Assembly: GCA_002269645.1 (NCBI GenBank) | Contig: NIVC01001231.1 | Span: forward strand, 79,440 to 143,439 | Source: Macrostomum lignano | Taxonomy: Eukaryota | DNA length: 64,000 nucleotides | Direction of reading: 5' to 3' | In this document: piece by piece, positions 20,718 through 62,460 of the stretch | How the letters are laid out: each line of letters begins with the position of its first letter | Position numbering within the stretch: the stretch's first letter is position 1 | Notes under the pieces: generated by a model | The model's database searches: none | What the model saw: the letters and a program-made list of their open reading frames with translations, nothing else | What the model was told of the DNA's origin: nothing | Made by a program: the position numbers and the translations under genes

Positions 20718-23700
20718 ATGAAGTTTCTGTCGGGAATACTCGTCAATATTTTTGCGATTGCGATAGCGATGGTCGCTGTCGAGCCGCTTGAATTCGAGGA
20801 GGCGTCCAGCAGTGACGAAATGATCTGGAATCTGCTGCAGCTAGGCAGAAAATACAATAAAGCTGTTCGGCCGCCGCCAGATTACAACACAACCAATGTG
20901 GTCTACATCAACTTTATTGTTGTCAAGCTGCTAGGAATTGTGAGTTATAATGAACTATTAAATACCTTTGAATTTACACAAAGTGAAACAAGTCCTTTTC
21001 CTGATTTCTCGCTTGATTTTGCCTTACAAAAATTCTTTAGATGTAGTTTTATTACTTTGTCTATCAGAATTACATGCTCCACCCACTCGTCGCAACCGGG
21101 CCCTCACGCCTACGCACTAAATTTTGACGGCTTTGCGATTCTACGCAAAGATTAATGTAAAGATTAATGCTTAGATTAATGTAAGATCGTATTATAGGCA
21201 AAGATTTAGAGTGAAAGAGCTGTCTGTGTGCAGAGCGGCGTTGGTACCACTTGACCAAATTAGACTGACGAGACGTCTATGGGAGAACTTCCAAATTTTG
21301 GACTAAATAAAGTTCTTTCCATTCATACCCTTTTACGCACTGGTTGATTAATTACCAACGCTGACTCAGTTTTCATCATGGCTTTATAAAATAGGATTTC
21401 AATCGATTGATAACTGGTGGGCCATCTGCGATTTTTAACCATAGATTTTTTACCAAGGCGTTATAAAATTGGCCCCAGTGGACACGCAACGTTCAAAGTT
21501 ATATTTTTGCACAAAATATAGGACTGTTCATAAGACAACGATTCAGCTTTGGAGCCGTCACCAGACGTTTGTCTGATGTCCTAAAAAGTCTATGGTGAAT
21601 GGGCATTTCTCAACTTACGTCAACTAATGCCGACGTACCGAAAACTTAATATATAGATTTTGCAAATTCCAAAAAAATTGTTTTCTCGTCGTCTTTGGTG
21701 CTTTTTCATGACGTCTGCTGTACGTCGGCTTAACGTATAACTACTCATTTCTATAACGAGAGTCCGTTGCAGGACGTCAGAAACGTCTGGAGCTGACGTC
21801 GCTTTATAGACGAGCACGAGCTGAAAGATCGCTTTACAAAGCCGAATCTCTTATCAATATTTAGTTCAAAAATATAACTTTGAACGTGTGTATCCACAGG
21901 TGAGGTGGTCGTGGCTACGTGTCTACAGCAGATAAATATTTGTTTGTAGATTGCGTGGCTTCTGCTCCGTAGAGCATTCTGGCGTTCGTCCGATGTTTCA
22001 GATGTCTATTGTCTGTTGTATAACGTCGGATGCGTCGGTGGAATCCGGATAGAGGAAATATTTTATTGGCACCAATTTAGACCATAAATTATAAGAAGCC
22101 AACTGATAAAGTCAGTAAATGGCACTACAGATGCAAGGCAACCCATAGCAATTCTCTCAGAAACTTCGAGCTCGAAATTGCATGTAAAACAATTGGTATA
22201 CAATTTCGATACCACAATTATTTTAATTGCTTTTCCCCAATAGCTAAAATGGTTATACCGCTCTATTTCAGAACGAAGTTGCTCAGCACATGTCGCTGGA
22301 AGGCTTTACCGAAATGGTAAGTGGAACAATTTATTGCGCCCAGCTCGACTAATAGCCTGCACAAACACGCAGAGCTTCCACCATGCTTCAGATTTCAAAT
22401 TGCTCACATCCGTGCGCCGAACTTTAACCAGCGTCACCGAACTATGCTGCCTATTTGGGTGGATTAGGGATTGTCTGAAGCTCATGAAAGCTGCACCCCT
22501 TCGATAAACATTACCGCAGGAATGGAACGACTACCGTCTAGCCTGGTACGACAGATACAATGGAACGTTCAACCACATAACGGTCATCTATTTGCCGCGA
22601 TCTTCCATCTGGATACCCGATGTGATCACGATAAACACGTGAGATGGGCTCTAGAATCTACTTTAATAATAACAATTATAACACTTCTTTAGTTTCGTCG
22701 AGTGAGCAGTTAATTGAAGACATCGGAATTGACCGAGCAAGTATTTGTTTTGGTCCGAGGTTGACTCACAGGTGAAGGATAACTAATTTTTGAAAAATAT
22801 GTCCTCAAAAAGGAATTAGCAATCATTATCAGCCATTTGCGCATTAATTCCGTGAACCGGGTTTTCGTGAATTCGGTTTTGCCTTGCTTGACACTCAGAA
22901 GTCCTGTAGCCAGTAGGTGAGCTATCGGAATTTTAGCATTTGAAAGCAATCAGAGAACTGTGTATCCAACTTTACCTGTAATCCGATTTGCAGCGAAAAC
23001 AGGCATTTAATACGTGAAAATCGTGATTTACGAGTGTAGCTAGCATACTTTTACTTTGATTGCCCATTGCGCCATCGTATAATGCAATAATTACAGTTGA
23101 TGCTCAACCAATAACCAATAACTTCGATTCAAGAGTCGAGCACAAAGAGTCAACTCAGCCGTTGTCCGCCATTGTGCTGGCCGACGGTCGCGTTTTCACC
23201 AGTTCGCCGTTCAATACGCGAACCCTGTGCGACATCAACATGCTGTACTTCCCGTTCGACACCCAGGTCTGCAGAGTGGTGTTCGGCAGCTGGCTGATGG
23301 TCAGGGCGGACCTGGAGCTCCGGGTGCTCAACAAGAACGCATCATCGGTTCTGGCACCGGACACTCTTCGTCAGCAGAACATCGAGAGTGATGAATACTG
23401 CATAACAAAGAGCGACTTCTGGGTGACACCAGTAACCGATCTCGGCGCATGCCAGGAGGCAGTTTTCACAATCGTCATTCAGGTAGGGCATCAGTCAGCA
23501 CCAATTCTAATGATACTTATGAGCTCGGATTTGCTCAGATGAACATGGACTCGGAGCAGTTCCAACAGATATCGGCATGAATCTCATTTTAGCGAAAGCC
23601 GCTCTTCTACGTGATGAACCTCATCATGCCGAGCTTCCTGATCCTCATCATCTGCGCGTTCAGCTTCTTCCTGCCGCCAGACACTGGCGACCGGCTGTCG

Positions 23701-28576: not shown

Positions 28577-29217
28577 TTGACTTACTTGACTTAGCTGCAG
28601 GGCTGTCCCGAAGGGGACACAGCGGGAAGGCGCGGGCGCCCATTCCGCTAGTCCCTGAACGGCCGACGCGTCGCTATGGACGGAGGGTTGGCGCCGCCCA
28701 GGGAGGTCCCCCAGTGTCGCCAGCAGCTATGGTGCTCTCTGGAAAGGAGAGTTCAGCCCTGCGGGTGGCCCGAAGGTAGCGCATGAGCTGATTAAAGTTT
28801 TCGGGTTTGCACGCTTCAGTAATAGATGTGTGTGGCCCGAGGTAAGTGAGTCTGGCCCGCGTGAAGGCGGGACAGATGCTGACGAAATGCTCAGCGGTTT
28901 CGTCACCTGAGTTGCAGAAGCTACAGGTGGCGTTGGTGGCGTTGCCCTGCAGGTACTGGTGCCTGGAGAAGCAGCCGTGACCAGAGAGGGTCATGGTGGC
29001 AGCCCGGATGTCTCTGCGCGAGAGGCGCAAGAGGAGCTTCCGGAGCTGGTGAGAGGGCTGAGGGACAGCGTCTCTGGATTGCCTGCAGTTCGTGCGGTTC
29101 GCCCAAGTCGAGCGGTGCTGAGTCCTGATCCACGCTTTGATGCGCGAGTCGATGACACAGCCAGGAATCGGGACAAGAGGTTCGGGGCCGAGAGAGGAGC
29201 CGGAGGCACCAACTTCA
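28577..29217 (-). mobile_element. 5'-truncated non-LTR retrotransposon (R1/LOA/I-like C-terminal CCHC region)
   Basis: LSGHGCFSRH..CSFCNSGDETAEHFVSICPAF..R; 3' tail (TAAGTCAAG)x2; candidate 7-bp TSD GCTCCTC at 28570-28576 and 29218-29224. Confidence 0.8.
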
Positions 29218-32490: not shown

Positions 32491-32871
32491 CTAAAACAGC
32501 AGCGGGTCGTATCGCTTCCGGAAAAGAAGCGGGTCGTATCGCTTCCGGAAAAGCAACGGGTCGTATCGCTTCATAGACAGCAGTGGGTCGAACCTCTTCA
32601 TGGACAGCAGTGGGTCGAACCTCTTCATGGACAGCAGTGGGTCGAACCTCTTCATGGAAAGCAGTGGGTCGAACCTCTTCATGGACAGCAGTGGGTCGAA
32701 CCTCTTCATGGACAGCAGTGGGTCGAACCTCTTCATGGACAGCAGTGGGTCGAACCTCTTCATAGACAGCAGTGGGTCGAACCTCTTCGTGGATAGCAGT
32801 GGGTCAAACTTCTTTGTCTTTGATAAACTGGACTTATCGGAGTGGTGTCGAGCACCATATTCTTTCGGAGC
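32491..32871 (-). CDS. Probable last exon of a neuropeptide prohormone (12 KR/KK-flanked FDPLLS(T/M) and YDPLLF peptides)
   Basis: The 27-bp repeat reads KK-FDPLLST, 8x KR-FDPLLSM, 2x KR-YDPLLFR, KR-YDPLLF-stop. Many unit differences are synonymous. Strong acceptor TTTTTTTCTTGCACACCGCAG at 32873/32872. Signal-peptide exon not resolved. Confidence 0.75.
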   Translation of the reverse strand, partial: APKEYGARHHSDKSSLSKTKKFDPLLSTKRFDPLLSMKRFDPLLSMKRFDPLLSMKRFDPLLSMKRFDPLLSMKRFDPLLSMKRFDPLLSMKRFDPLLSMKRYDPLLFRKRYDPLLFRKRYDPLLF

Positions 32872-36330: not shown

Positions 36331-36492
36331 TACTTTTACATGTAGGACAGATTATCGCAGGTCAAATTGCAGTGGTTCCGAACTGTACTTTAACATGTAG
36401 GACACATTATCGCAGGTAAAATTGCAGTGGTTCCGAACTGTACTTTTACATGTAGGACACATTATTGCAGGTAAAATTGCAGTGATTCCGAG
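36331..36492. repeat. 55-bp tandem repeat, about 3 copies
   Basis: TACTTTTACATGTAGGACACATTATCGCAGGTAAAATTGCAGTGGTTCCGAACTG. Confidence 0.85.
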
Positions 36493-38400
36493 CTATATGT
36501 TTATAGAGGCTGGAAATTTAATTTGCCTAAAGCGTAAAAATTAATTACAAGGCCAAATCTCTTTAAAACTGCAGATGAGTTTGTCGCATCAAGTAAAACA
36601 AGCCTTCAGTGTAGCCTGTGAAGCACATTAGACAAAGTCGCGGTAACTTTATCCCATTATAAAAGCTGTAATAACAACGCGAGACAGCTAGGCATCCAAC
36701 ATCTGCCTGGCTCGATGCCTTAAATAATAAATCTTTAATAATGCCAAGATTCCGAATGCAAAGCAACGGAGAGGGAAAACTGATCCGAGTTTGATCATGA
36801 CTAGAAAATAGATTTTCCCACGCCTGCATTAAGGCTTCTTGCTTGATGAAAGAATTTGAGCTTGAGAACTAAAGACTTGTTGAGGCCTTCTTCGACACAG
36901 ACCAAATGAAATTCAAGTCAATGGGAAATGCATAATCCAACCTCAATTTTTGTGTTCTACACTGTTTAGTGATCGATTTTTAAATTGAATCTCGCTTCCA
37001 GTTTTCCTGTTATTAGGATAGCGGGAATAAAAGCAACTGCATAGGAAACTTTGCCAACATTTCTCATCAAAGTTTCATGCCACAAACGATGATCCGGTTT
37101 CATTCTTCGTATGAGGGAGCACGGAAACAGAAGACCGTCAACTCGGCTGTTACACTTCATGGCCACCCTGCTAAATAAAACAAGGCAAACTATTTCTCTG
37201 TAAGGTAGTTCTGCCACGCTAGAGTGCCGAACTATATACTTTGTTCATGACCCGGTAATATTTACTGCTCCTGCAATATTATGCAGGGCGACTTTATTGC
37301 TGTACTGCACACTGCGGCTTCATGACGCCTCTCCTGTCTGCCTTCATCTGTTCTACCGCGCTTTTATGTTCATACAATTTACGAGTTAATAACCTAATTG
37401 CCGCCGAATATACACTCAACAACATTGAAAAGTCGCCCCTCTATGAGCAATTCTAAAATAAAAGATACGAGAAAATTGAGGGGCAGCTTCAATCCGTCCA
37501 ACCCTCGCACACCGCTCCCCCAACTTCATTCCTCAACTTAAGTCTGTCGCGCGGCGTAGCTAAGTTGCGTCCCTCGCAAGATTGAGAGACTTCACCTGCA
37601 CTCACAAAAGTGGCGACCACAGACGGAATCTGCTGTGATGGCGACTTTTCGATGTTGCTGAGTATACACTTCAGCTCGTATAGACACTGCGTGGCCAATC
37701 CTTGACGGTTTTAGACCCCTATTTATTAGCCGAACTCAAAGAACCAAACCTTTAATAAATACGCTGGTATTTCCTATTAGCAGAAATCAACACCACTTGT
37801 GTGTACTATTTCATTATCTGAAATAAATGAGCTACTTGAGCCGTACTACTTGACTATCTGACAATCGCTCAACAATCTAACCCCCTTCCCCCCAACAATT
37901 CCCCCAGCCATCCCCCATGAGCCTTGATATCTCAACAATTTCCCCAGTAGGCCTTGATGGGATCAGTTATACTCGAAGCAGTTTTTACAAATCAGTTTTT
38001 ACAAGGGATTTGAGGGTCACGGCGTCAGTTTTCTTGTAAAATAACTAAGTCAGTTAAGAACTAAGACTTAATTTTTTTCTGTTACAAAAATTCAGCTAAT
38101 TTGGATCCAGCTTTTTTAAAGGATCGTCTTTTTACCTGCCGATTTACGTGATTTACGTGATTACGTAACGGAGCCAGCCGACCATGGATGGGGTGCGAAG
38201 CTGGTGCAGAAGTGGACTGCGAGTCCGCTCGCAGTTAAAAATCGCAGCAGTTTCTTGTAACGCAGTTATTGCGAAATCGCAGTTTCGCAGTTAAACCGCT
38301 CGCAGTTTCCCTTCGAAACAGCAGCATACAGTACTACTGTACACACTCTGTAGCCAGTGAGTACTTGCGGTCTGAGCTGTTACTAGAGACCGCAACAAAG

Positions 38401-41400
38401 GGGATGTCAACTTAAGCACCAGAATGGAGCCCGAAGTTCAGCTCCGGACCAAACCGACTACAATCGATAACTTGTCGGCCCAGACGACTAGAATCGCCGA
38501 GACATCCCATCCGGCTCCCTTCCTTGGGGTCCCAGGGGATAAAGGGGATAAAATGGGGATCTCATGTCAACTTAAGGCTCTGGAATGGAGCCCGAAGTTC
38601 AGCTCCGGACCAAACCGACTGCAATCGATAACTTGTCGGCCCAGACGACTAGAATCGCCGAGACATCCCATCCGGCTCCCTTCCTTGGGGTCCCAGGGGA
38701 TAAAGGGGATAAAATGCAGATCTCATGTCAACTTAAGGCTCTGGAATGGAGCCCGAAGTTCAGCTCCGGACCAAACCGACTGCAATCGATAACTTGTCGG
38801 CCCAGACGACTAGAATCGCCGAGACATCCCATCCGGCTCCCTTCCTTGGGGTCCCAGGGGATAAAGGGGATAAAATGGGGATCTCATGTCAACTTAAGGC
38901 TCTGGAATGGAGCCCGAAGTTCAGCTCCGGACCAAACCGACTGCAATCGATAACTTGTCGGCCCAGACGACTAGAATCGCCGAGACATCCCATCCGGCTC
39001 CCTTCCTTGGGGTCCCAGGGGATAAAGGGGATAAAATGGGGATCTCATGTCAACTTAAGGCTCTGGAATGGAGCCCGAAGTTCAGCTCCGGACCAAACCG
39101 ACTGCAATCGATAACTTGTCGGCCCAGACGACTAGAATCGCCGAGACATCCCATCCGGCTCCCTTCCTTGGGGTCCCAGGGGATAAAGGGGATAAAATGG
39201 GGATCTCATGTCAACTTAAGGCTCTGGAATGGAGCCCGAAGTTCAGCTCCGGACCAAACCGACTGCAATCGATAACTTGTCGGCCCAGACGACTAGAATC
39301 ACCGAGACATCCCATCCGGGTCCGTCTCTTGCCGAAACTTCCAACACCCCCGGCGGCTCGGATGTGTAACTCAAAGTCTCTCCAGGAGTCACCTTCGTAG
39401 CTACCGAGAACCTCCTTGACACGAATGTTTTGAATGTAATAATCGGCTTGATTTAGTTGATACGGACCCACCGAAACCTCTGACAAATTCACTGTATGAA
39501 TTCGGGGGAACCCCGAGCTTTTTGGATCCAGCGGGTTGACAGCAATCCATGCCCTTGTGTTAGCAGGGGGGCACGCTTCAGATCACAGTTGAAGTGCAGC
39601 TGCTCAATTTCGTCCAGTTCGTTGGACAAGAGCACTCGGCGCATGAAATTCTGCCCGAATTCGAACAACGATAGCCCTGTCCATGACGGTGGCAGCTGTT
39701 TAAATGATTCAAAACCTGGATGCGCCCGGTTGTACTTTGCCATCGAGGTCTCGATAACAACGTCTAATCGGCTGGGCTCACTGAAGCCGGCTGACGGCAG
39801 CCACTGATACGGTTTGTGCCTCTCGATAACACATTTGTCCTGCTTAATGGCAGCAAAGCAGCACTCAACGACAGAGCGGAACATAGTGGCACAGCGGATG
39901 TCTCGGCGATTCTAGTCGTCTGGGCCGACAAGTTATCGATTGCAGTCGGTTTGGTCCGGAGCTGAACTTCGGGCTCCATTCCAGAGCCTTAAGTTGACAT
40001 GAGATCCCCATTTTATCCCCTTTATCCCCTGGGACCCCAAGGAAGGGAGCCGGATGGGATGTCTCGGCGATTCTAGTCGTCTGGGCCGACAAGTTATCGA
40101 TTGCAGTCGGTTTGGTCCGGAGCTGAACTTCGGGCTCCATTCCAGAGCCTTAAGTTGACATGAGATCCCCATTTTATCCCCTTTATCCCCTGGGACCCCA
40201 AGGAAGGGAGCCGGATGGGATGTCTCGGCGATTCTAGTCGTCTGGGCCGACAAGTTATCGATTGCAGTCGGTTTGGTCCGGAGCTGAACTTCGGGCTCCA
40301 TTCCAGAGCCTTAAGTTGACATGAGATCCCCATTTTATCCCCTTTATCCCCTGGGACCCCAAGGAAGGGAGCCGGATGGGATGTCTCGGCGATTCTAGTC
40401 GTCTGGGCCGACAAGTTATCGATTGCAGTCGGTTTGGTCCGGAGCTGAACTTCGGGCTCCATTCCAGAGCCTTAAGTTGACATGAGATCCCCATTTTATC
40501 CCCTTTATCCCCTGGGACCCCAAGGAAGGGAGCCGGATGGGATGTCTCGGCGATTCTAGTCGTCTGGGCCGACAAGTTATCGATTGCAGTCGGTTTGGTC
40601 CGGAGCTGAACTTCGGGCTCCATTCCAGAGCCTTAAGTTGACATGAGATCTGCATTTTATCCCCTTTATCCCCTGGGACCCCAAGGAAGGGAGCCGGATG
40701 GGATGTCTCGGCGATTTTAGTCGTCTGGGCCGACAAGTTATCGATTGCAGTCGGTTTGGTCCGGAGCTGAACTTCGGGCTCCATTCCAGAGCCTTAAGTT
40801 GACATGAGATCCCCATTTTATCCCCTTTATCCCCTGGGACCCCAAGGAAGGGAGCCGGATGGGATGTCTCGGCGATTCTAGTCGTCTGGGCCGACAAGTT
40901 ATCGATTGCAGTCGGTTTGGTCCGGAGCTGAACTTCGGGCTCCATTCCAGAGCCTTAAGTTGACATGAGATCCCCATTTTATCCCCTTTATCCCCTGGGA
41001 CCCCAAGGAAGGGAGCCGGATGGGATGTCTCGGCGATTCTAGTCGTCTGGGCCGACAAGTTATCGATTGCAGTCGGTTTGGTCCGGAGCTGAACTTCGGG
41101 CTCCATTCCAGAGCCTTAAGTTGACATGAGATCCCCATTTTATCCCCTTTATCCCCTGGGACCCCAAGGAAGGGAGCCGGATGGGATGTCTCGGCGATTC
41201 TAGTCGTCTGGGCCGACAAGTTATCGATTGCAGTCGGTTTGGTCCGGAGCTGAACTTCGGGCTCCATTCCAGAGCCTTAAGTTGACATGAGATCCCCATT
41301 TTATCCCCTTTATCCCCTGGGACCCCAAGGAAGGGAGCCGGATGGGATGTCTCGGCGATTCTAGTCGTCTGGGCCGACAAGTTATCGATTGCAGTCGGTT

Positions 41401-42095
41401 TGGTCCGGAGCTGAACTTCGGGCTCCATTCCAGAGCCTTAAGTTGACATGAGATCTGCATTTTATCCCCTTTATCCCCTGGGACCCCAAGGAAGGGAGCC
41501 GGATGGGATGTCTCGGCGATTTTAGTCGTCTGGGCCGACAAGTTATCGATTGCAGTCGGTTTGGTCCGGAGCTGAACTTCGGGCTCCATTCCAGAGCCTT
41601 AAGTTGACATGAGATCCCCATTTTATCCCCTTTATCCCCTGGGACCCCAAGGAAGGGAGCCGGATGGGATGTCTCGGCGATTCTAGTCGTCTGGGCCGAC
41701 AAGTTATCGATTGCAGTCGGTTTGGTCCGGAGCTGAACTTCGGGCTCCATTCCAGAGCCTTAAGTTGACATGAGATCCCCATTTTATCCCCTTTATCCCC
41801 TGGGACCCCAAGGAAGGGAGCCGGATGGGATGTCTCGGCGATTCTAGTCGTCTGGGCCGACAAGTTATCGATTGCAGTCGGTTTGGTCCGGAGCTGAACT
41901 TCGGGCTCCATTCCAGAGCCTTAAGTTGACATGAGATCCCCATTTTATCCCCTTTATCCCCTGGGACCCCAAGGAAGGGAGCCGGATGGGATGTCTCGGC
42001 GATTCTAGTCGTCTGGGCCGACAAGTTATCGATTGCAGTCGGTTTGGTCCGGAGCTGAACTTCGGGCTCCATTCTGGTGCTTAAGTTGACATCCC
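38401..42095. mobile_element. Foldback-type element: inverted arms of 161-bp tandem repeats around a transposase fragment
   Basis: Both outer ends read GGGATGTCAACTTAAGCACCAGAATGGAGCCC. Left arm 38401-39319 (about 5.7 units), right arm 39896-42095 (about 13.7 units, inverted), 576-bp spacer. No TSD seen. Confidence 0.9.
39320..39895 (-). pseudogene. Internal fragment of a PIF/Harbinger-ISL2EU-like (DDE_Tnp_4) transposase
   Basis: RCATMFRSVVECCFAAIKQDK resembles the third-acidic-residue motif (R..T..RW.VE....LK.W). After a frameshift, FPRIHTVNLSEVSVGPYQLNQADYY matches the FP.L....L..I.LG.YQLKQA.SY motif. Recognised by eye. Confidence 0.62.
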
Positions 42096-42571
42096 GTTAA
42101 ATAACATAATATGCAATCACTGAATCAGTCAATTCACTGCGTCCACCATCCATCACCATCACCATTCAACAATCGCATTAGAAGTACAAATTTACGATTT
42201 ACAACTTCACAACATAATCGCAGTTCGCAACAATAATAAGACGCCTTACATTTCATACAAAACAGTTTGCAAAAACTACAAAAAACTACAAAAATTACAA
42301 AACAGAATGAGCAACGACGTACTCAGAGTAAGCAAACCCTCAAACAAATAACCCACCCCAAGCACTGACCCCAGAGCCCACAGTCCATAAACGATCAGAG
42401 TCAGTCAGAGTCCAACAAATTCATTCCTAGAAAACGATTTTACGATTCACACATTTCATTATTTGGATAACTAAACGATAGTCTAAAAAATTGCATTGTG
42501 AAGTGAAGTGGAACTGAAAAATACATGATGAAAATTGAAAGTTGAAAATGTCTATATGTTCCATCTTATCA

Positions 42572-46830: not shown

Positions 46831-47712
46831 CTTCTATAAGTTCTATATGTCCTATGTGCCATAGCAATTCAGAAATTGGCCATGAATTTATTATGGTTGA
46901 CTCTATTATTCTTTTATGTTTGAACCTTAAGCCTTAACCTTACCTTTCTCTGTGTCAAGTCATAGCAGTTCAGCAATTATCCTTGAGCCTAAGAATTTCA
47001 AGTAATTCCCCTATGAGCCAGTGCCATAGCAACTCAGAAATTCACCTACAAGAGTCTTGACATCTTGATAATTCCATTAGTCTTTATAGTTAAACCCAAA
47101 CTCTAACCTTGCTAAGTCAAGCATTTTAGAAATTCTTCCTATGAACCTTGGAATCTTTATCATTACCTAATGAAACTTAACATTTCATGAATTCTATCTA
47201 AGCCCAAGAGTTATAGGAATTCTTTTATAAGCTTTTTTAGCAAAAACCAAATGATATGTATTTTAAAGTTGATATGACAATTCTTGTATGTTTGTTATAA
47301 CATTTGTTTATTATTTTTATTTTATTTATTATTTTATTTTTAAATAATGCTTCTTTAATCCATAATGCTTTTATGGCTGACGTGCCCTAGGCCAGTTTTC
47401 AGTGAAACAATAACATGAATTGTAGCCCTTATAATTTAACACTCACATTTTTAAAGGTGAGCTTAGACTTATTAATTTCTCTTGGTTAAGTGAATTTGCA
47501 TCACTTCTATTAGTATCTGGGCTTAAGCTAAAATATTTTTTGTAAATAATAATAAGCACAAAAGAGACTATTCAAATCTAGATTTATAAACAATAATCAA
47601 CCATCTTCAATTTCATATATTGCTGTGGAGTATTTAGCTAAAGCATATTCAGGCAACAATCCTATGACAGCTGGTGTACGCATGCAAACAGCAAGCCACC
47701 TCACTGACCAGA

Positions 47713-49674
47713 ATGCTTCACTGTCTGCTGCTGCGATGCATTCGCCCAAATCCAGCCGCAGCTCTGCCTCGGCTATTGAATCGCTTTGCTGGCAACTCAG
47801 CAACAGCAGCCTCTGGCGGGGCCTCCCCTGCCAGCCCGGCCCCACTGCAGCCAGCGGCCGTGCAGTTCTACAGGCGAGCCCTGCCAGCCAACTGCGTGGC
47901 ATTCGGCAGCCCCGAGGGCAAGCAAGTATTCGCGAGGCCCTTGAGGCCGGCTTCATGGAAGGCTATTTTTCCCTGGCTTCGCAGTATCGAACTCAGGACG
48001 ATCCGTCATTCTGCGGCCTGGCAACGCTGGTGATGTGCCTCAATAGCCTGGAGGTGGATCCTGGAAAAGTTTGGAAAGGTCCCTGGCGATGGTTTCACGA
48101 AGAGATGCTGGACTGCTGCGTGCAGGTGAGGCAGGACAAACAGTCGGGAAGGAACCCAGATCCACGGTTTTCCCTGGGGAGGGTCAGCTGACCCCCTTGT
48201 CCCCCACAGGATATAGCAGGGTCTTCTAATCCCCGTGACCCCTTGTCCCTCCCACAGGATATAGCAGGGTCTTCTAATCCCCGTGACCCCTTGTCCCTCC
48301 CACAGGATATAGCAGGCTCTTCTAATCCCCCTGACCTCTTTGTCCCCCCACAGGATATAGCAGGGTCAACTAATCCCCGTGACCTCCTTGTCCCCCCACA
48401 GGATATAGCAGGGTCAACTAATCCCCATGATCCCCTTGTCCCCCCACAGGATTTGGCAGGGCAACTTATCCCTGTGACCTCCTTGTCCCCCCCACGGGAC
48501 TTGCTATTGTGCTTGTAATTTTGCGTTGTTCAGTAATTAAAAAAAATGCATATACTAATGACCCTACTGTTAGTAGAAATGTAAAAATAGTATTAATTTT
48601 TTTGTTCAGCTACTTAGAGTAGAAATATAAGTAAAATATGCGAAAATACTTGACTTGCGCCCACAGGTGGACCGGGTCCGCAAGCACGGCCTGACCCTGG
48701 CTGAATTTGCCTGCCTGGCTGGCTGCAATTCGCTCCAGGTGCGCCGCCTGGTGCATCCCGCCTTCGACGCCGATCCTCAAGCCGACGCCGCCGGCCTCGC
48801 CGAATTCGAAGCGGCCGTTCGCGACTGCAGCCGCACGGACGGCTGCATCCTGGTGGCCAGCTACAGCCGGCGAGCGCTCGGCCAGACCGGGGACGGCCAC
48901 TTCGCCCCGATCGGTGGCTTCCACCCGGACAGGCAGCTCGTGCTCATATTCGACACGGCCCGGTTCAAGTATCCGTCGCATTGGGTGCCGCTGCGCCAGC
49001 TCTGGGATGCGTTGAAGCTGCCAGACTCAGCCACTGGACGGCCGCGCGGCTACTGCGTGCTGGCCAAGGCCCCGGGCCTCACCGCCTTCCGCGTCTCGCA
49101 GCGATTCGCCACTGGCGTCCGGCAGCCGGACTCGCCGCTGCTGCGGCTGGCGCGCGACTTTGAGGACTGGCTGGCCGCGGAGGTTGAGGTGGGTGCGCCA
49201 GCCAATCAGATCAGAGAGATGAGTGACGCTATCGCGGCCCTGTCGCAGGCGGCCGGGCAGCTGGGCCGGCTGTGCGGCCGCCACCGGTTGGCCGAGGCCG
49301 TTCTCAGTCGGCAGCGTCAGGCCGCGGCGGACGCGGATGCCGAGGCTGTGCTGGCGGCGCTGCGCTCGCTGCCGGCGCTCGGCCCGGTCGGCGACGCCTT
49401 CCTCGCCGGCCTGAGGCAAAGCGCAGCCGCCGCAGGCGTGGCCGCGGATGTCCAGCTTGAAGTCGACAACGGCTGCGGCGGTGCGGACGGCTCGCTGGCC
49501 CTCCTGACGCTGCTGGCTTGGCCGATGCCGCCGGGTTCGGCCCGTGCCGCTCTGCTAGCAGAGGCGCGCGATTGGGTGCTGCGCTGCGCGCCGAACCGCC
49601 TAGCAACGGAGGTGCAGCTGTTGCGCAATCAGCTATCGACAATATTCGAGATAGCGCCCGTGCGAGTCTCGTGA
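47713..49674 (+). CDS. PCS: Phytochelatin synthase (exons 47713-48125, 48667-49674; one-base frameshift at about 47931)
   Basis: [18 protein letters not shown] / [45 protein letters not shown]; [10 protein letters not shown]; FDTARFKYP; Cys-His-Asp triad intact. Confidence 0.93.
48187..48497. repeat. 48-bp minisatellite in the PCS intron
   Basis: Unit CCCACAGGATATAGCAGGGTCTTCTAATCCCCGTGACCCCTTGTCCCT, about 6.5 copies. Confidence 0.93.
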
Positions 49675-50173: not shown

Positions 50174-50409
50174 AAATTTCTACGGAATTGCTAATCATGA
50201 TGCAACAACCAACTGTAGCTAACCTAATTATAATATTCTGCATTTTAAAAAAACCCAATTCACTTTTTTGATGGAATTATGCAATTTTTTAATATTACAA
50301 TCTAAGTATTTGTTTTTCATTGCTTTCATCAAGCAAAATTGCAAGTTTTGCATCTGATTTCTATACTTTTTTTAATGAGAATTACTCGCCATGTGTTCTG
50401 CTCTGACGT

Positions 50410-51230
50410 GAATAAATAGAATGGATTGCTAATCTAGCCAATCAGAGGTGAATGAATAGAATGGATTGCTAATCTAGCCAATCAGAGGTGAATGAATAGA
50501 ATGGATTGCTAATCTAGCCAATCAGGTGAATTAATAGAATGGATTGCTAATCTAGCCAATCAGAGGTGAATGAATAGAATGGATTGCTAATCTAGCCAAT
50601 CAGAGGTGAATGAGTAGAATGGATTGCTAATCTAGCCAATCAGGTGAATTAATAGAATGGATTGCTAATCTAGCCAATCAGAGGTGAATGAGTAGAATGG
50701 ATTGCTAATCTAGCCAATCAGAGGTGAATGAATAGAATGGATTGCTAATCTAGCCAATCAGGTGAATTAATAGAATGGATTGCTAATCTAGCCAATCAGA
50801 GGTGAATGAGTAGAATGGATTGCTAATCTAGCCAATCAGAAGTGAATGAATAGAATGGATTGCTAATCTAGCCAATCAGGTGAATTAATAGAATGGATTG
50901 CTAATCTAGCCAATCAGAGGTGAATGAATAGAATGGATTGCTAATCTAGCCAATCAGAGGTGAATGAGTAGAATGGATTGCTAATCTAGCCAATCAGGTG
51001 AATTAATAGAATGGATTGCTAATCTAGCCAATCAGAGGTGAATGAGTAGAATGGATTGCTAATCTAGCCAATCAGAAGTGAATTAATAGAATGGATTGCT
51101 AATCTAGCCAATCAGAGGTGAATGAATAGAATGGATTGCTAATCTAGCCAATCAGGTGAATTAATAGAATGGATTGCTAATCTAGCCAATCAGAGGTGAA
51201 TGAATAGAATGGATTGCTAATCTAGCCAAC
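50410..51230. repeat. 40/38-bp minisatellite carrying a CCAAT box
   Basis: GAATGGATTGCTAATCTAGCCAATCAGAGGTGAATGAATA alternating with a 38-bp variant. Confidence 0.95.
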
Positions 51231-51639
51231 AGAGTTATTTTCGTTACTGCGTGTGTACTCTTGTCATGTCTAATACAATTAATCACAATATATTAAGTAC
51301 TTAATATTCTTAGGCCGCTTCTATTTTTCTAGGATGACAAGTAACAATTGCAGTTGACTGGATTGCCTGCAGTTTGATGATAAGCTGGTGATATAAGCTT
51401 TTGTTTTATTGTAATTATATGTACTTTTACTGTTTATTAACGCTTGTAAAAAAACCTAGTTTTTCCTTACGCAGCCAAGTACTGTAAACAATACAAATAT
51501 AATGTACTTATACAAGTGAGATTTTTGATGCGCTTTTTGAAGAAAGGTCTCTGTAAATGCTTTTAAAATTCCGGGTATCATCTGTGCTCACGGCTAATAC
51601 TTAAAATTATTAAAACCTTGCATTGTTTGGCTGCCAACT

Positions 51640-51975
51640 TCCCAGATTCTCAGTTGCTGGGCCAGCCTCCCAGATCCTCAGTCGCTGGGCCAGCCTCTTA
51701 GATCCTCAGTTGCTTGGCCAGCCTCTCAGATCCCCAGTTGCTGGGCCAGTCTCCCAGATCCTCAGTTGCTGGGCCAGCCTCCCAGATCCTCAGTTGCTGG
51801 GCCAGCCTCTCAGATCCTCAGTTGCTGGGCCAGCCTCCCAGATCCTTAGTTGCTGGGCCAGCCTCCCAGATCCTTAGTTGCTGGGCCAGCCTCCCAGATC
51901 CTCAGTTGCTGGGCCAGCCTCCCAGATCCTCAGTTGCTGGGCCAGCCTCTCAGATCCTCAGTTGCTGGGCCAGCC
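51640..51975. repeat. 28-bp minisatellite
   Basis: CTCAGTTGCTGGGCCAGCCTCCCAGATC. Confidence 0.93.
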
Positions 51976-52125
51976 CTGATCTGTCGTGCAAAATGAAATG
52001 ATTCCTTGTTTCAGTTTACGAATAAGTTTGCAGACAAGGAAGCGCAGCCGCGTCAAGGTCAGACCACAAACGAGGCACCTCTTATTTATTCAGCCCGATG
52101 AGTTTCATCGCCATCAGCTACATTA

Positions 52126-55100
52126 TCAGAGACGCGTATTGTCATTGTTGAAAGAGAGCCCGGTGCACTGGTTCTCCTTCCACCAGCCGCCCAGGTGAAT
52201 TCCGTAGTAATTCTTGTGCGCCTCCACGCAGGCCATCAGGTTGGAAGGGCTCAGGCAGGACCGCCAGTTGTCCGAGGAGTTGGCGCAGCTGCTGTCCTCG
52301 TTAATCGGCGTGCCGGTGCAGATGCGGTGGCCGCCGCTGCCGGGCAGCATGTCGGCAGTTCTCGCGAAGAAGACCTCGGTGCCGTGATGGTAGGGGAAGC
52401 CGAGGTGCCCGGAGCAGCTGAAGGGCGCAACCAGACGGGAGACGCCGCGGCTCGACAGCATCACCGGCGAGCAGATTGGCAGGTGCACGATGAGGTCCTG
52501 GAGAGTTTGAGCACATTTTTTATCCTGGAATCACGGTTACTTATTAGACTAGCTGAGGAAATGCCTCATATTGAGAGCACTTGGCCATCTGAGAAACTCC
52601 TCATTGACAGCACTTGGCCATCTGAGCAACTCCTCATTGAGAGCACTTGGCCATCTGAGCAACTCCTCATTGAGAGCACTTGGCCATCTGAGCAACTCAT
52701 CATTGAGAGCACTTGGCCATCTGAGCAACTCCTCATTGAGAGCACTTGGCCATCTTAGCAACTCCTCATTGAGAGCACTTGGCCATCTGAGCAACTCCTC
52801 ATTGAGAGCACTTGGCCATCTGAGCAATTCCTCATTGACAGCACTTGGCCATCTGAGCAACTCCTCATTGAGAGCACTTGGCCATCTGAGAAACTCCTCA
52901 TTGAGAGCACTTGGCCATCTGAGAAACTCATCATTGAGAGCACTTGGCTATCTGAGCAACTCATCATTGAGAGCACTTGGCCATCTGAGAAACTCCTCAT
53001 TGAGAGCACTTGGCCATCTGAGCAACTCCTCATTGAGAGCACTTGGCCATCTGAGCAACTCCTCATTGACAGCACTTGGCCATCTGAGCAACTCCTCATT
53101 GAGAGCACTTGGCCATCTGAGCAACTCATCATTGAGAGCACTTGGCCATCTGAGCAACTCCTCATTGACAGCACTTGGCCATCTGAGCAACTCATCATTG
53201 AGAGCACTTGGCCATCTGAGCAACTCATCATTGACAGCACTTGGCCATCTGAGCAATTCCTCGTTGAGCAAGATTTGCAATAGTCTCACATTTCCGTGCA
53301 CTACTCGCCAGCTGTTGGGCACCAGCCTGTCGAATGCCCTGGCAAAGAAATAGTCACCAACTCTCGGCTCGCCGAGCGAGTAGAAGGCCAGACGGCCGGG
53401 CGTCACGCCATCAATGGCGGCCAGACTGGCTGCTGCGAGGGCCGCCATTGCGCCTCCGAGTGAGTGTCCGGTGACCAACAGGCTGTGGTCAGGGTTGGCC
53501 CGCATCAGCGCCAGCGTCGGCTCGTGAAGCTGCGGCCAGAGCGCTTTGAATCCGTTGCTAAAGTACGCCTGTACTTTGCCGCCGATCGGGAAGGCCTCCT
53601 TGGGCATGGCGAGGCCCATGAGGCCCTCAACCAGCAGTTGGCTGCTGCCGGTGGTGCCACGAAAGGCGAGCACGATCAGCTTGCGGTCCGGCAGGCGGCC
53701 TGTGGTTCAGGTTTTGGAACTTTTATTTTTGTTTCTCTATCAATGACTTCTTTAAGTCTGTATGGGGGTTTTGCCCAGCAAACTCGAACTTGAAAACAAA
53801 CAGCAGCAAAACAGAGTAGGAAAAGCGTCTCAGGGCGCGCCTCAAGACTTGGGATCGAACGTCAGAATCTGAAGCGCTGGCGTCAGCAGCTGCAACTCTT
53901 TTATCAGCTGTGACCAGCAGGACTTGACAAGACTCTGTGACCTACCTGCTGGAGTCGCCGACGTCACGACAGGTGGCTAAGTCTGCATTTTTGATGACTT
54001 CCCGCTCAGGGGGTGTCTGAACTGGCGGGATGTCTCTCCGACATTTGCGGAACGGCGTCACAGAAGACACAGTGGTAGAGAGCCGCAGCCTGTCTGTCAT
54101 GCATACTGTATGACTGATGGTTGCTGTTGGTAGAATAGAATCTACAACTTAGCTTTTCGGCTTAGATGTAGCTTACTCGTAACAGAAGCATGCAACAGTA
54201 ATTTCTAGCCTTTGCTCTGCTTACATGTCCTCCGTGAGAAAGAGACATTATTTCGGAGCAAAGTCAGCAAATCTAGCTAGAGAACTCACCAACAAAGCCG
54301 GAGCACTCGTCGTGCAGCATGTCGCAGGCTGCCACGCCTTTGACGACGTCAACTAGACGGCCTCCGCCTGCCTGCGCCGCCGGCGGGAAGTTCGCCAGAC
54401 AGGGCGCCGGCTCCGGAGCGTAGGCAGCGCCCGAGATAGCGGCGGCCAGCTCGCTCAGCCGGGCGTCGAACTCGTAGTGGCCGTTGTCCGGCTCGTGGCA
54501 CTTGCCGGGATCCACGACCTCCTGCGCATGATTGAACTTAATTACTTATTGAAGCGCCTTACGCTTGTAATTTGAAAACTCAGTTATAGAGTTTGAGAGG
54601 TCAAAACTAGCATAAAGCTCATAAAGCTTGATTATGAGCTAGTTTTTATCATTTAGTTCTTAAACTCAGCTGCAGTTTTTGTCGTTTGGTATCCATAATA
54701 TGATATCCATCGGAAGGCTTGACTTGTCGACTGTCGGGTGTGAATCCTTAATTTCATGGCAAATCCCATCTCTTCGTGAATACAAAAAAGTATCTTTAAA
54801 AAAAGCTCAGAAGTGCAAGGAAGACAATTTGTTTTAGGAAGTACGAGCTATTTTTTAAAGCTTTCGTTGTCCATATCGAGCAAGAAGAATACTCGTAACT
54901 CCTGTTGTAACCAATAAGACGCTTTGGTTATAAAGGTTAGCGCAAAGGCTTACAGCGGCCCTTTCACACCATCATCAGTCCTCAAGGGCGCCAATCGGAC
55001 GACAAGCCCATTGCGGCCAATATCTGTGCACGAGCCCTAAATTAATGCGGCCACGCACTGAATCGAATCCGGTACTTTGTCGCAAGATTTAGCTTGTAGA

Positions 55101-56196: not shown

Positions 56197-57369
56197 TCAC
56201 CAAAATCGACCCCGAGCGCCCAGGTGAGCAGTCAGCGCCCTCCTCGGACACACCTCCGGGTCCTTGACGTCCCTGTGGAGTAGCACGATGCCGCGCTGCC
56301 GAGCGGTCTCAGTCGCTGTCTCAAGATAGAGGCTGGATTCGAACTTGCGATCGAAGATGTCGAGGTAGGACAGACTCTCGGCCAGGCAGAGAAACTGCAG
56401 CAGGGCTTCGTCGCTGATGCGGGGCACACCGAAAAGGTTGAGGTGTCGCAGGTGCGGGCAGACTGTGCGGATCGACTCCAGGCTGCGGCCGGTGAGGTTG
56501 TGACAGCAGGTGAGATTCAGCGTCTCCAGCTGGGGGAGGCCCTGCAGCAGCGATCTCAGGTTGGAGTCGGTCATTAGGTAGCCATGGCGACGTAGATTCA
56601 GGATACGCAGGCCGGGGCATCGGGTGCGAACGATGGCGAGCGACTTCGGTGTCAGGTAGCAGCCTTCGAGGTCCAGGATTTCAAGTGAAGAGGACAGTAT
56701 GCAATCCAGAGTTTGATTGTTGAGCATCTTTTTACTGCGAAGCCGCTGTATGAGTTGGCTGCGGGAGAACAAAAGTTTTTCATGCTTTGCATAATAATTC
56801 GACTCTGTTTGTCCATATTTATTGTGTAGCAACTTTTGCTTACCTTATCAGATAGTCGTCATTGAAATCGGAGAAGTCGTATTGCTTAATGTTCATGGCA
56901 ATGGCATCCAGGCATATTTCTCCAAGTTTTTTTACTCTTGAATTGTCATGAAATGGCTTCTAAAAAGGAAGGAAGTAGTTTTACGTTTAAATCTAACTTG
57001 AACTGTTAATTGTTGTCATTTAGCTGAAAATATCTATGAATGGCATCTTTAAGACCGAAGTGATACTTACCTCTTCAAGCCGCCGTCCAAACGTAGCTCG
57101 AACAATTGCTGACCATTTAAAGCATCCTGCTTTATTTCAAATCGTTTCACCCCTCGAAAGGAGACATCTTCTGTTATTACTGACTTCAACAATTCTTGTG
57201 CGTATCCTTTAAGTAAACTGCACTCAAGAAGCTCGTCGAGATCTACAAAGTCCCCGTCGTTAACTGCAAGACCCTCTTTGGCAGCACCATATCGAAGTAA
57301 ATAAGCAAGAATTTTTCCTATCCGTTTGCGCACAATGGGGTCTAGCTGGCCCCTCAGCTTGTCTTTCAT
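56197..57369 (-). CDS. Tpt1/KptA N-lobe-like domain fused to AMN1/FBXL-like leucine-rich repeats (exons 57369-57071, 56959-56844, 56758-56197; one-base deletion at about 57106)
   Basis: KILAYLLRYGAAKEGL..DGDFVDLDELL..KRFEI..(I)VRATFG; VKKLGEICLDAI; LEILDLEGC, CPGLRILNL, LETLNLTCC, CPHLRHLNL. Exon 1 is 299 nt and needs +1 to match the phase-0 acceptor. Confidence 0.72.
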
Positions 57370-61124: not shown

Positions 61125-61735
61125 AAAGGATTCCCCTTTTGGTATCCAAGGGAAATCCTAGTTGCTATACGGGAAGGATTCCCCTTTCAGTATCCAAGGG
61201 AAATCCTAGTTGCTATACAGGAAGGATTCCCCTTTCGGTATCCAAGGGAAATCCTAGTTGCTATACAGGAAGGATTCCCCTTTCGGTATCTAAGGGAAAT
61301 CCTAGTTGCTATACAGGAAGGATTCCCCTTTCGGTATCCAAGGGAAATCCTAGTTGCTATACAGGAAGGATTCCCCTTTCGGTATCTAAGGGAAATCCTA
61401 GTTGCTATACAGGAAGGATTCCCCTTTCGGTATCCAAGGGAAATCCTAGTTGCTATACAGGAAGGATTCCCCTTTCGGTATCCAAGGGAAATCCTAGTTG
61501 CTATACAGAAAGGATTCCCCTTTCGGTATCCAAGGGAAATCCTAGTTGCTATACAGGAAGGATTCCCCTTTCGGTATCTAAGGGAAATCCTAGTTGCTAT
61601 ACAGGAAGGATTCCCCTTTCGGTATCCAAGGGAAATCCTAGTTGCTATACAGAAAGGATTCCCCTTTCGGTATCCAAGGGAAATCCTAGTTGCTATACAG
61701 GAAGGATTCCCCTTTCGGTATCCCAGGGAAATCCC
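61125..61735. repeat. 48-bp hairpin-forming minisatellite between the SELENOT stop and the SECIS
   Basis: GGAAGGATTCCCCTTTCGGTATCCAAGGGAAATCCTAGTTGCTATACA, about 13 copies. Confidence 0.95.
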
Positions 61736-61864
61736 AGTTAATATGCGACAAAAATATCAAATCCAGCAGTATCCAAGGTAAAATCCATTCGAACAATCTG
61801 CATTACTTAAGATAAAATGCAAATGTCAGAAGCGACTCGCTGCTCTAACCAAACAGAACTCACA

Positions 61865-61942
61865 CAGCGCGCTCTGAATGACGAACAGTTTGGCCGAAAA
61901 CTCGTAACAAAATTCGAGTGGCCACTGGTCTGAAAATGGCTG
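61865..61942 (+). promoter_or_regulatory. SECIS element (form 2) of SELENOT
   Basis: AUGAC (61878-61882), helix II GAACAGUUUGGCC / GGCCACUGGUC, unpaired GAAA, mini-stem ACUCG/CGAGU, closing UGAA (61931-61934). Confidence 0.85.
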
Positions 61943-62289
61943 CTTAAAACAGTTGAGCAGCCGGCGCCTGCCTGTCAGTCTGTACAGTCTCAGGCGATAA
62001 CTGATTGACCCAATTGATTTCTGATTTCTGTTCCAGCGCTTATCCCAGATTTACCAGTCGATATTGAATTAAAAACGGTTTGCGTTTGTTTTCAGTTTTT
62101 GCAAATTCTTTCTGCATCGATCCTAAAGCTAAATTTTACCCATAATTTGTTATTGGATTAATAAACGCAAGCATGTGTACACCCGGATGTTGTCTTTTAG
62201 AGCTTTCTTGTCGGTTTTATTTATTTTTTGTAAATCCTTAGTCTAATTTCTTGATTGGTCCTGCTTGTATCAATAGTTTGAAAATAGCA

Positions 62290-62460
62290 ATTGATTTCAC
62301 CTGCCCCAATGGGTAGATGTGCAACCGACAGTTCAGCCGCAGCCATTGCGCGGCGCATCTGAAGGCTGCGCACGTCCTTATCTTGCTCAAGGACACACAA
62401 ATTGTTCCGAGTGGGTCGGGAATCGAACCCCCGTCGTGAGACCCATAGGCTACAACCCCC
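62290..62460 (-). mobile_element. tRNA-derived SINE
   Basis: Minus strand: A-box-like TAGCCTATGG, B box GGTTCGATTCC, central GTGTCCTTGAGCAAG motif typical of SINE conserved cores, and a 3' GCCGC/GCGGC hairpin tail shared with 7881-7937. Confidence 0.75.

What the first reader, a model, noticed from the sequence alone, without database searches (positions are those of the whole stretch)
38401..42095. 3.7-kb foldback element whose arms are 161-bp satellite arrays around a Harbinger/ISL2EU-like transposase fragment
Seen: both arms begin with the same unique terminal variant (GGGATGTCAACTTAAGCACCAG), are built of near-identical 161-bp units in inverted orientation, differ in copy number (5.7 vs 13.7) and stop at nearly the same phase of the unit. 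The spacer encodes the transposase segment from the third catalytic residue onward. No TSD is visible (CAAAG|..|GTTAA). Known: foldback elements with modular TIRs can seed satellite DNA, and 161 bp is close to a nucleosome repeat. Inference: a possibly undescribed PHIS-group family acting as a mobile satellite factory and able to form a 900-bp hairpin (dsRNA or cruciform).
Basis: partly seen in the sequence, partly recalled or inferred. Interest (0 to 1): 0.82.

Follow-up and report, generated by a model that had tools for sequence, protein, structure and literature searches.

The report
Foldback transposon with satellite-repeat arms
This is a real 3.7-kb defective "foldback" DNA transposon in a flatworm (Macrostomum lignano-type) genome: its two inverted arms are tandem arrays of a 161-bp unit, they enclose the dead tail of a rare Harbinger-superfamily (PHIS) transposase gene, and it is a new variant of a known kind of element.

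Summary
The left arm (38401-39331) holds 5.7 units of 161 bp and the right arm (39896-42095) holds 13.7 inverted units. The arms are 99% complementary, and both outer ends carry the same private 22-mer. No TSD is present.

The 564-bp spacer is the 3' part of a transposase gene on the minus strand. It aligns to residues 362-560 of a 560-aa homologue (P0003) with two frameshifts. It starts 10 residues before the R-x3-E motif inferred to hold the catalytic E.

The family has a significant HTH_Tnp_4 domain, sub-threshold DDE_Tnp_4 matches and DHT/DxGY/RxxxE motifs. I therefore place it in the PHIS superfamily.

An autonomous-like relative (L001) has the same tip (GGATGTCAACTTA) about 800 bp upstream of its ORF and no satellite there. 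The satellite arms are thus probably a derived feature.

Two Macrostomum lignano gene models contain satellite plus spacer in other genomic contexts, which indicates at least three dispersed copies.

Harbinger (TWA TSD) and ISL2EU (AT TSD, THAP domain) fail as labels. The missing TSD and AAA flanks at 3 of 4 termini resemble Spy, but the DDE spacing does not.

The "satellite factory" idea could not be tested. Foldback elements with tandem-repeat arms are already known (FB, Galileo, Tetris).

The parts
38401..38436 (+). Left terminal inverted repeat tip. It holds the private 22-mer GGGATGTCAACTTAAGCACCAG, and about 30-36 bp are conserved with the termini of related elements L001 and L005.
38401..39331 (+). 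Left arm. It has one terminal unit (156 bp, lacking 5 nt), four full 161-bp units and a partial unit. The sequence is solid to 39319 and decays by 39331.
39332..39895 (-). Middle domain, a transposase pseudogene fragment. It is homologous to P0003 residues 362-471 (39896-39567), 471-537 (39570-39370) and 544-560 (39361-39311). It has two frameshifts, and the first reading frame ends at a stop codon at 39489-39491. The motif R-S-V-V-E at its 5' end is the inferred third catalytic residue.
39896..42095 (-). Right arm with 13.7 inverted 161-bp units. Its inner end lies exactly at the internal inverted tip motif GGATGTC (39896).
40008..41617 (-). Two 805-bp blocks of 5 units each (40008-40812 and 40813-41617) that are 100% identical. 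This is a very recent higher-order tandem duplication inside the right arm.
42060..42095 (-). Right terminal inverted repeat tip, with the same 22-mer as the left end.
38391..38400 (.). Left flank CCGCAACAAAG. It ends in AAAG, as do the flanks of L001 and L005. No TSD is formed with the right flank.
42096..42105 (.). Right flank GTTAAATAAC, with no direct repeat of the left flank.

Best explanation
This is a non-autonomous, internally deleted foldback derivative of a cut-and-paste DNA transposon. The parent belongs to a rare lineage of the PHIS (PIF/Harbinger-ISL2EU-Spy) superfamily, and the genome is Macrostomum lignano or a very close relative. The ancestral element had simple inverted termini of about 30-36 bp (GGATGTCAACTTA...). 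It encoded a transposase with a C2H2 finger, an HTH_Tnp_4 domain, a DDE domain and a long C-terminal region.

In this lineage the terminal 161 bp became tandemly amplified. Each unit repeats the tip-like 13-mer ATGTCAACTTAAG in direct orientation and the exact tip 8-mer GGGATGTC in inverted orientation. Each unit also carries three GGGGAT(A) motifs, seen directly in the sequence. I infer that every unit adds transposase-binding or pseudo-terminal sites, as shown for Galileo and proposed for Tetris.

Two internal deletions removed codons 1-361 and the C-terminal exons, leaving a 564-bp dead fragment. I infer that movement depends on a transposase supplied in trans and that insertion makes no TSD. 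Array length then changes by unequal exchange or slippage; a perfect 805-bp five-unit duplication shows this directly. The two arms can pair with each other, which makes the locus prone to hairpin or cruciform formation and to rearrangement (inferred).
For: Anatomy.

Spacer is a transposase 3' part: exhaustive HMMER gave P0003 at E=1e-33, P0004 at 5e-23 and P0006 at 3e-5. tblastn covers the whole spacer.

The family is a real, conserved transposase: P0003 against P0006 gives E=3e-66 over 500 aa, with conserved DHT, DxGY and RxxxE motifs.

PHIS affinity: HTH_Tnp_4 scores 33.5 bits against a gathering score of 27 in L002 and E=2e-4 in P0003. DDE_Tnp_4 scores E=0.011 and 0.025 at homologous positions in P0003 and P0006. 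The P(19)R(3)E spacing fits the PHIS signature described in PMC4122938.

The same terminus occurs on relatives: L001 has AAAG-A-GGATGTCAACTTAGGC about 800 bp upstream of the transposase ORF. L005 has ...GTTGACATCC at the 3' end of a deleted copy.

Other copies: the M. lignano gene models P0001 (UniRef100_A0A1I8IYQ6) and P0002 contain satellite plus spacer. P0002 shares the identical right-arm/spacer junction, at 98.9% over 40149-39871. Both sit in other genomic contexts and have different left junctions.

L001 has no 161-bp-type array in its 5' 800 bp, so the arrays look derived.
Against: Only one complete copy could be inspected. No empty site was found and no TSD is present, so mobility of this exact structure as a unit is inferred, not shown. 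The DDE_Tnp_4 matches are below Pfam's threshold, and the AF2 model was useless (pLDDT 34). The right-end flank (TAAC-G in inward orientation) departs from the AAAG-N seen at the other three termini. M. lignano has undergone recent genome duplication (my own background knowledge), so some 'copies' could be homeologues, although their flanking contexts differ. The unit copy number in such perfect arrays may be misassembled.
Confidence: 0.78

Rival explanations
1. Assembly or long-read artefact: a fold-back chimeric read or a mis-joined satellite array produced an inverted repeat that does not exist in the genome.
For: The units are nearly perfect, and two 805-bp blocks are 100% identical. Sequence of this kind is hard to assemble. 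The copy numbers 5.7 and 13.7 could be wrong.
Against: A chimeric palindrome would be symmetric about a centre and would mirror its flanks. Here the symmetry ends precisely at the same private 22-mer on both sides, next to two different unique flanks. The centre is a 564-bp unique, asymmetric gene fragment. Independently predicted M. lignano proteins (P0001, P0002) contain the same arm/spacer junction, and P0001 contains both arm orientations.
Confidence: 0.04
2. A rearranged remnant and not a transposable unit. A dead transposon's terminal array was locally inverted and duplicated, for example by template switching or by recombination between two neighbouring partial copies. The 3.7-kb structure therefore never moved as one piece.
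For: There is no TSD. The arm lengths are unequal. The right-end flank deviates from the AAAG-N pattern. P0002 shares the right junction but has a different, longer left side, so the left junction of the window copy is a later, local event.
Against: Both outer ends stop at exactly the transposon tip and share the same private terminal-unit variant, which is absent from the internal units. P0001 also combines both arm orientations around the spacer in another context. Absence of a TSD is normal for one PHIS group, Spy (PMC4122938).
Confidence: 0.13
3. One reading: the element is a member of PIF/Harbinger or of ISL2EU proper.
For: HTH_Tnp_4 and DDE_Tnp_4 are the Pfam domains typical of Harbinger-type transposases. 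The tip contains GG/GGG, as in the ISL2EU and Nuwa groups (PMC4482050). The low-confidence predicted secondary structure puts D197 between two strands and E372 in a helix, which is the Harbinger/ISL2EU pattern and not the Spy pattern (PMC4122938).
Against: There is no TWA 3-bp TSD and no AT 2-bp TSD. There is no THAP domain; the N-terminus is a C2H2 finger. No Myb or YqaJ second ORF was seen on the short contigs. The D(93)D(80-85)E spacing is long.
Confidence: 0.1

Closest known systems
Tetris (Drosophila virilis foldback element; PMC4079207)
   Same: It is a non-autonomous foldback element whose arms contain tandem repeats (TIR-220) that share a stretch with the terminal domain. It has a variable middle domain and many rearranged forms, and its array copy number varies.
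   Different: Tetris makes 8-10 bp TSDs and is tentatively placed in Mutator. It has no coding remnant, and its autonomous parent is unknown. The element here has no TSD, 161-bp units that start right at the tip, and a transposase remnant that identifies a PHIS-type parent. Free satellite arrays were shown for Tetris and were not tested here.
Galileo (P superfamily) and the classical Drosophila FB elements
   Same: They have long inverted arms with internal tandem repeats. In Galileo these repeats carry extra transposase-binding sites, as cited in PMC4079207. [quoted passage not shown]
   Different: The transposase superfamily is different (P with THAP for Galileo; FB unresolved or MULE-like). 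These elements make TSDs of 7-9 bp (my own knowledge). They are insect elements.
Spy transposons (PHIS superfamily; PMC4122938)
   Same: Spy makes no TSD and inserts between AAA and TTT. Here AAA precedes 3 of 4 termini, and the window site reads AAA|...|TTA if one more base is assigned to each end. Spy TIR length is highly variable (9-1,474 bp). Spy has a single transposase with an N-terminal HTH. Spy occurs in invertebrates.
   Different: Spy has D(79-80)D(44-62)E, whereas this family has D(93)D(80-85)E. The Spy tip is GGANNNNG directly after AAA, whereas here it is G-N-GGATGTCA. Long Spy TIRs are reported to have no subrepeat structure. This family also has a C2H2 finger and a long Cys-containing C-terminal region.
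ISL2EU and PIF/Harbinger (PMC4482050)
   Same: They share the HTH plus DDE_Tnp_4-type transposase core and a GG-type TIR start.
   Different: The AT or TWA TSDs are absent here. The THAP domain of ISL2EU is absent. No YqaJ or Myb second ORF was found.

Membership tests
Foldback-type TIR element (FB / Galileo / Tetris architecture) | Long inverted arms make up most of the element | tested here: met
   The arms are 931 and 2200 bp of 3695 bp and are 99% complementary.
Foldback-type TIR element (FB / Galileo / Tetris architecture) | Arms are built of tandem subrepeats related to the terminal sequence | tested here: met
   There are 5.7 and 13.7 units of 161 bp. Every unit carries ATGTCAACTTAAG and an inverted GGGATGTC.
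Foldback-type TIR element (FB / Galileo / Tetris architecture) | Middle domain lacks a functional transposase | tested here: met
   The 564-bp fragment corresponds to residues 362-560 only. It has two frameshifts and a premature stop in the first frame.
Foldback-type TIR element (FB / Galileo / Tetris architecture) | Target site duplication flanks the element (7-10 bp in the Drosophila families) | tested here: not met
   The flanks are ACAAAG| and |GTTAAAT, with no direct repeat.
Foldback-type TIR element (FB / Galileo / Tetris architecture) | Dispersed multiple copies | tested here: inconclusive
   Two further copies are inferred from the M. lignano gene models P0001 and P0002, which lie in different contexts. 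The genome itself was not available for a search.
PHIS superfamily | N-terminal HTH of the DDE_4-type transposases (Pfam HTH_Tnp_4) | tested here: met
   L002:3-530 scores E=3.1e-8 and 33.5 bits, above the gathering score of 27. P0003 scores E=2e-4.
PHIS superfamily | DDE_Tnp_4-type catalytic core | tested here: inconclusive
   PF13359 scores E=0.011 (P0003) and 0.025 (P0006) at homologous positions, both below the gathering score. The DHT, DxGY and RxxxE motifs are conserved. The structure model failed.
PHIS superfamily | Conserved P(18-28)R(3)E block around the catalytic E (PMC4122938) | tested here: met
   P0003 has P349, 19 residues, R369, 3 residues, then E. The window fragment has R-SVV-E.
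PIF/Harbinger | 3-bp TWA TSD | tested here: not met
PIF/Harbinger | Second ORF with a Myb/SANT domain | not testable with these tools
   The autonomous-like contigs are only 1.4-5.9 kb. None was seen on L001, L003 or L004.
ISL2EU | AT TSD within A|AT|T | tested here: not met
ISL2EU | THAP domain in the transposase | tested here: not met
   P0003 and P0006 start with a C2H2 finger and have no THAP domain. The THAP domain in P0002 lies in an unrelated part of a chimeric gene model.
Spy | No TSD | tested here: met
   This rests on one complete element.
Spy | Insertion between AAA and TTT | tested here: inconclusive
   The inward-facing flanks of the four termini are AAA(G), AAA(G), AAA(G) and TAA(C). 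Without an empty site, the AAA(G) could instead belong to the element.
Spy | D(79-80)D(44-62)E spacing | tested here: not met
   The spacing is D197(93)D291(80)E372 in P0003 and D(93)D(85)E in P0006. The catalytic residues are assigned by motif only.
Spy | TIR tip GGANNNNG | tested here: inconclusive
   The tip core is GGATGTCA, which has GGA but an A at position 8, and it sits 2 nt inside the AAA.

The most novel reading that the evidence does not exclude
P0003, P0006 and the window fragment represent an undescribed PHIS lineage with a C2H2 finger, HTH_Tnp_4, a wide-spaced DDE and a Cys-containing C-terminal domain. Like Spy, it integrates without a TSD at A-rich|T-rich sites. In Macrostomum it has evolved arms in which every 161-bp unit is itself bounded by tip motifs. 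Transposase could then cut at internal pseudo-ends; the right arm ends exactly at one. This would shed or move array segments and seed 161-bp satellites around the genome.
Probability: 0.25. Interest if true: 0.7.

Novelty: new variant of a known kind. Interest (0 to 1): 0.5.

Why it matters
Foldback elements are usually orphans whose parent transposase is unknown. Here the retained gene fragment and the shared tip tie a satellite-armed foldback to a specific, very rare PHIS-type transposase lineage. This shows that the foldback and tandem-arm architecture also arises outside the Mutator and P superfamilies and outside insects.

The element also adds a second candidate group of eukaryotic cut-and-paste elements that leave no TSD. 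In addition, it explains chimeric gene models in the M. lignano annotation, for example A0A1I8IYQ6. M. lignano is a transgenic model flatworm with a very repeat-rich genome. In such a genome, 1-2 kb perfect inverted arrays are likely hotspots for rearrangement, misassembly and small-RNA production.

Tried and rejected
- Pfam on the spacer ORF alone gave no hit.
- Three word-index protein searches were run, with the spacer ORF, P0003 and the family alignment. They returned nothing new. Only the exhaustive HMMER search worked.
- Exact look-ups of the window ORFs, P0001 and P0002 found nothing on record.
- A monomer 23-mer in metagenome and viral contigs gave 0 hits. A metagenome related-loci scan with the family alignment gave 0 confirmed hits.
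- A PDB sequence search matched only C2H2 fingers. NCBIfam IS5-type models gave nothing.
- The AF2 model of P0003 had pLDDT 34, so no fold search was run.
- Rfam gave no hit on the element. The monomer alone folds no better than shuffled sequence (z=-1.6).
- L003 and L004, the distant 1043-aa homologue, are collinear at 98.5% almost end to end, and no termini could be defined.
- A paralogous empty site was sought inside the window and none was found.
- Frame-shifted satellite ORFs (122 aa, MEPEVQLRT...) were rejected as coding, because 161 is not a multiple of 3 and the ORFs merely wrap around the repeat.
Full report
**1. Observation**

Tandem Repeats Finder reports two arrays with a 161-bp period. 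One lies at 38404-39323 (5.7 copies) and the other at 39896-42092 (13.7 copies), at 98-99% matches. The inverted-repeat search pairs 38398-39331 with 41165-42098, 934 nt at 99% complementarity, and finds every other register of the array as well. A direct comparison of the left arm with the outermost 919 bp of the right arm shows 7 differences.

The 22-mer GGGATGTCAACTTAAGCACCAG occurs only at 38401(+) and 42095(-), where none is expected by chance. A unit-by-unit table shows 0-2 differences per unit. The same GG>CA variant occurs at one unit junction in the left arm and at two junctions, five units apart, in the right arm. The two five-unit blocks 40008-40812 and 40813-41617 are 100% identical. 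The right arm therefore grew very recently by a higher-order duplication.

The right arm ends at unit position 112 and the left arm at about 119-131. The flanks (ACAAAG| and |GTTAAAT) share no duplication. Nothing else in the window resembles the unit, the spacer or the flanks.

**2. The spacer**

On the minus strand the spacer reads RCATMFRSVVECCFAAIKQDK.... Pfam and the word-index search gave nothing for it. The exhaustive HMMER search of 1.84 billion representatives gave seven hits. tblastn shows that P0003 (560 aa) covers the whole spacer in three pieces:
- residues 362-471 align to 39896-39567
- residues 471-537 align to 39570-39370
- residues 544-560 align to 39361-39311

The spacer is therefore the 3' third of a transposase ORF with two frameshifts. 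It begins 10 residues before the RxxVE motif.

**3. The protein family**

P0003 and the 1043-aa P0006 align over 500 residues (E=3e-66, 28% identity). They share DHT, DxGY and R-x3-E motifs and an N-terminal C2H2 finger.

The N-terminal ORF of a third copy (L002, 78% identical to the window fragment in the overlap) hits Pfam HTH_Tnp_4 above the gathering score (E=3.1e-8). P0003 hits the same domain at E=2e-4. P0003 and P0006 each hit DDE_Tnp_4 at homologous positions with E=0.011 and 0.025. The P(19)R(3)E spacing fits the PHIS signature given by Han et al. (PMC4122938).

I therefore place the family in the PHIS superfamily with reasonable confidence. The DDE domain itself is sub-threshold, and the AF2 model was unusable (pLDDT 34). 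The inferred spacing D(93)D(80-85)E is wider than that of Spy.

**4. Termini of relatives**

L001 is the metagenome contig that encodes P0003. It carries TTAAAG-A-GGATGTCAACTTAGGC about 800 bp upstream of the ORF. L005 is an internally deleted copy from the same metagenome. It ends ...CAGTTGACATCC-A-CTTTGCC, which reads GCAAAG-T-GGATGTCAACTGAAGG in inward orientation.

About 30-36 bp of the tip are conserved with the window's termini. This links the arms of the window element to this transposase family independently of the spacer. L001 has no 161-bp-type array in its 5' region. The satellite arms are therefore probably a derived feature of the Macrostomum foldback form.

**5. Organism and other copies**

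P0001 is UniRef100_A0A1I8IYQ6 of Macrostomum lignano. P0001 and P0002 are chimeric gene models that contain both the satellite-derived peptide (MEPEVQLRTKPTAIDNLSAQ...) and the spacer peptide.

P0002 crosses the identical right-arm/spacer junction (98.9% over 40149-39871). On the other side it continues further into the transposase 3' end (...CWKFRQETPLENW), where the window turns into the left arm. P0001 contains both arm orientations but has different sequence between the spacer and the left arm. It also carries an upstream LINE-like exon whose only match in the window lies 9 kb away in a non-collinear position (28905-29003).

I conclude that at least three structurally different copies exist in different contexts. 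This is the pattern of a dispersed, rearranging family. One caveat is that M. lignano is recently duplicated (my own background knowledge), so a genome-wide count is still needed.

**6. Anatomy of the unit**

Each unit contains three kinds of motif (and direct reading of the sequence):
- the tip-like 13-mer ATGTCAACTTAAG, in the same orientation as the nearest outer end
- the exact tip 8-mer GGGATGTC, in the opposite orientation about 100 bp further in
- three GGGGAT(A) motifs

The right arm's inner boundary (39896) coincides with one of these inverted 8-mers. This fits the model in which tandem subrepeats multiply transposase-binding or pseudo-terminal sites. That was shown for Galileo and proposed for Tetris (PMC4079207). 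For this element it is an inference.

**7. Target site**

No TSD is present. That excludes the Harbinger (TWA), ISL2EU (AT), Pangu (ANT) and Nuwa (CWG, TNA) patterns described in PMC4482050. Spy elements make no TSD and insert between AAA and TTT.

Three of the four termini examined here are preceded by AAAG and the fourth by TAAC. If one more base belongs to each end, the window site reads AAA|G...G|TTA. This is suggestive. Without an empty site I cannot tell whether AAA(G) is target sequence or part of the TIR. The transposase also differs from Spy in spacing, in predicted secondary-structure pattern (low confidence) and in domains. The group assignment within PHIS remains open.

**8. Artefact check**

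A fold-back chimera would mirror its flanks and have a symmetric centre. Here the symmetry stops at the same private 22-mer next to two different unique flanks, and the centre is an asymmetric gene fragment. The junction is also present in independent M. lignano gene models. Only the exact unit counts remain uncertain.

**9. Comparison and novelty**

Foldback elements with tandem-repeat arms are well known (FB, Galileo, Tetris), so the principle is not new. Three things are new:
- the parent superfamily (PHIS-type, with a very rare transposase lineage)
- the absence of a TSD
- the host (a flatworm)

Long Spy TIRs were explicitly reported to lack subrepeats. No paper in the library describes such an element in Macrostomum. 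The 'satellite factory', nucleosome-length and dsRNA ideas remain untested.

**Verdict**

This is a real feature and a new variant of a known kind. Interest is moderate.

Noticed in passing
window 4-7158, 32501-32814, 48189-48492, 50408-53268, 61126-63795: The window is extraordinarily rich in minisatellites with 20-48 bp periods and arrays of hundreds to about 1400 bp (47 TRF rows). Many lie between or inside apparent exons, for example around DNA-ligase-like ORFs at 899-1474(-) and 2231-3136(-) and a lipase-like ORF at 52948-53673(-).
   Followed up: no
window 28905-29003 (-): A 33-aa stretch (ATMTLSGHGCFSRHQHLQGNATNATCSFCNSGS) is 97% identical to the N-terminal part of the M. lignano gene model P0001. 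By eye it looks like the zinc-knuckle tail of a non-LTR retrotransposon ORF, and it is another dispersed repeat.
   Followed up: partly
window 10365-11459 (+): An intact-looking 364-aa Tc1/mariner-type ORF. The Pfam matches are weak (DDE_3 E=2.7e-4; HTH_29 and HTH_23).
   Followed up: partly
window 17245-19038 (-): A 597-aa ORF with no Pfam hit at E<=0.001. By eye it resembles a Penelope-like reverse transcriptase followed by a GIY-YIG-like motif (YVGMTRRTKRDRMNQHRSNI). This was not tested.
   Followed up: no
window 47625-49674 (+), 23060-23542 (+), 56197-56832 (-): Host-gene exons: phytochelatin synthase (Pfam E=2.5e-39), a neurotransmitter-gated ion-channel ligand-binding domain (E=1e-14) and an LRR protein. 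The foldback lies in the gene-poor stretch between the channel exon and the phytochelatin synthase.
   Followed up: partly
window 36331-36491 and 38215-38300, 42217-42230: A 55-bp repeat in 2.9 copies contains ATCGCAGG...TTGCAGTGG. Clusters of TCGCAGTT-like motifs lie just left and right of the foldback. They may be another degraded repeat into which the foldback inserted. No paralogue occurs in the window.
   Followed up: partly
P0001 (UniRef100_A0A1I8IYQ6) and P0002 (UPI0007A1D47C): Public M. lignano protein models are chimeras that translate this satellite and the dead transposase fragment. P0001 is named 'DUF3480 domain-containing protein'. P0002 is 2393 aa long and also has THAP, PRP4-like and LINE RT pieces. 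These are annotation artefacts caused by the element family.
   Followed up: partly
L003 1256-4387 and L004 2010-5141: Two marine metagenome contigs (one from TARA Oceans, one from another ENA assembly) carry 98.5% identical copies of an intact 1043-aa homologue (P0006 and P0008). This suggests a recently active member of the lineage in an unidentified AT-rich marine eukaryote. Its termini could not be defined.
   Followed up: partly
L001 2584-3021: Past the stop of the 560-aa ORF, another frame of L001 encodes ...GCDCHVMAALLILGHYSYEPEAFRQRF.... This matches the Cys-containing C-terminal region of P0006 (...GCCSHVCAILIYLGVYIRNNDAFKNLY...). The true transposase is therefore longer than the prodigal-type call, through an intron or a frameshift.
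   Followed up: partly
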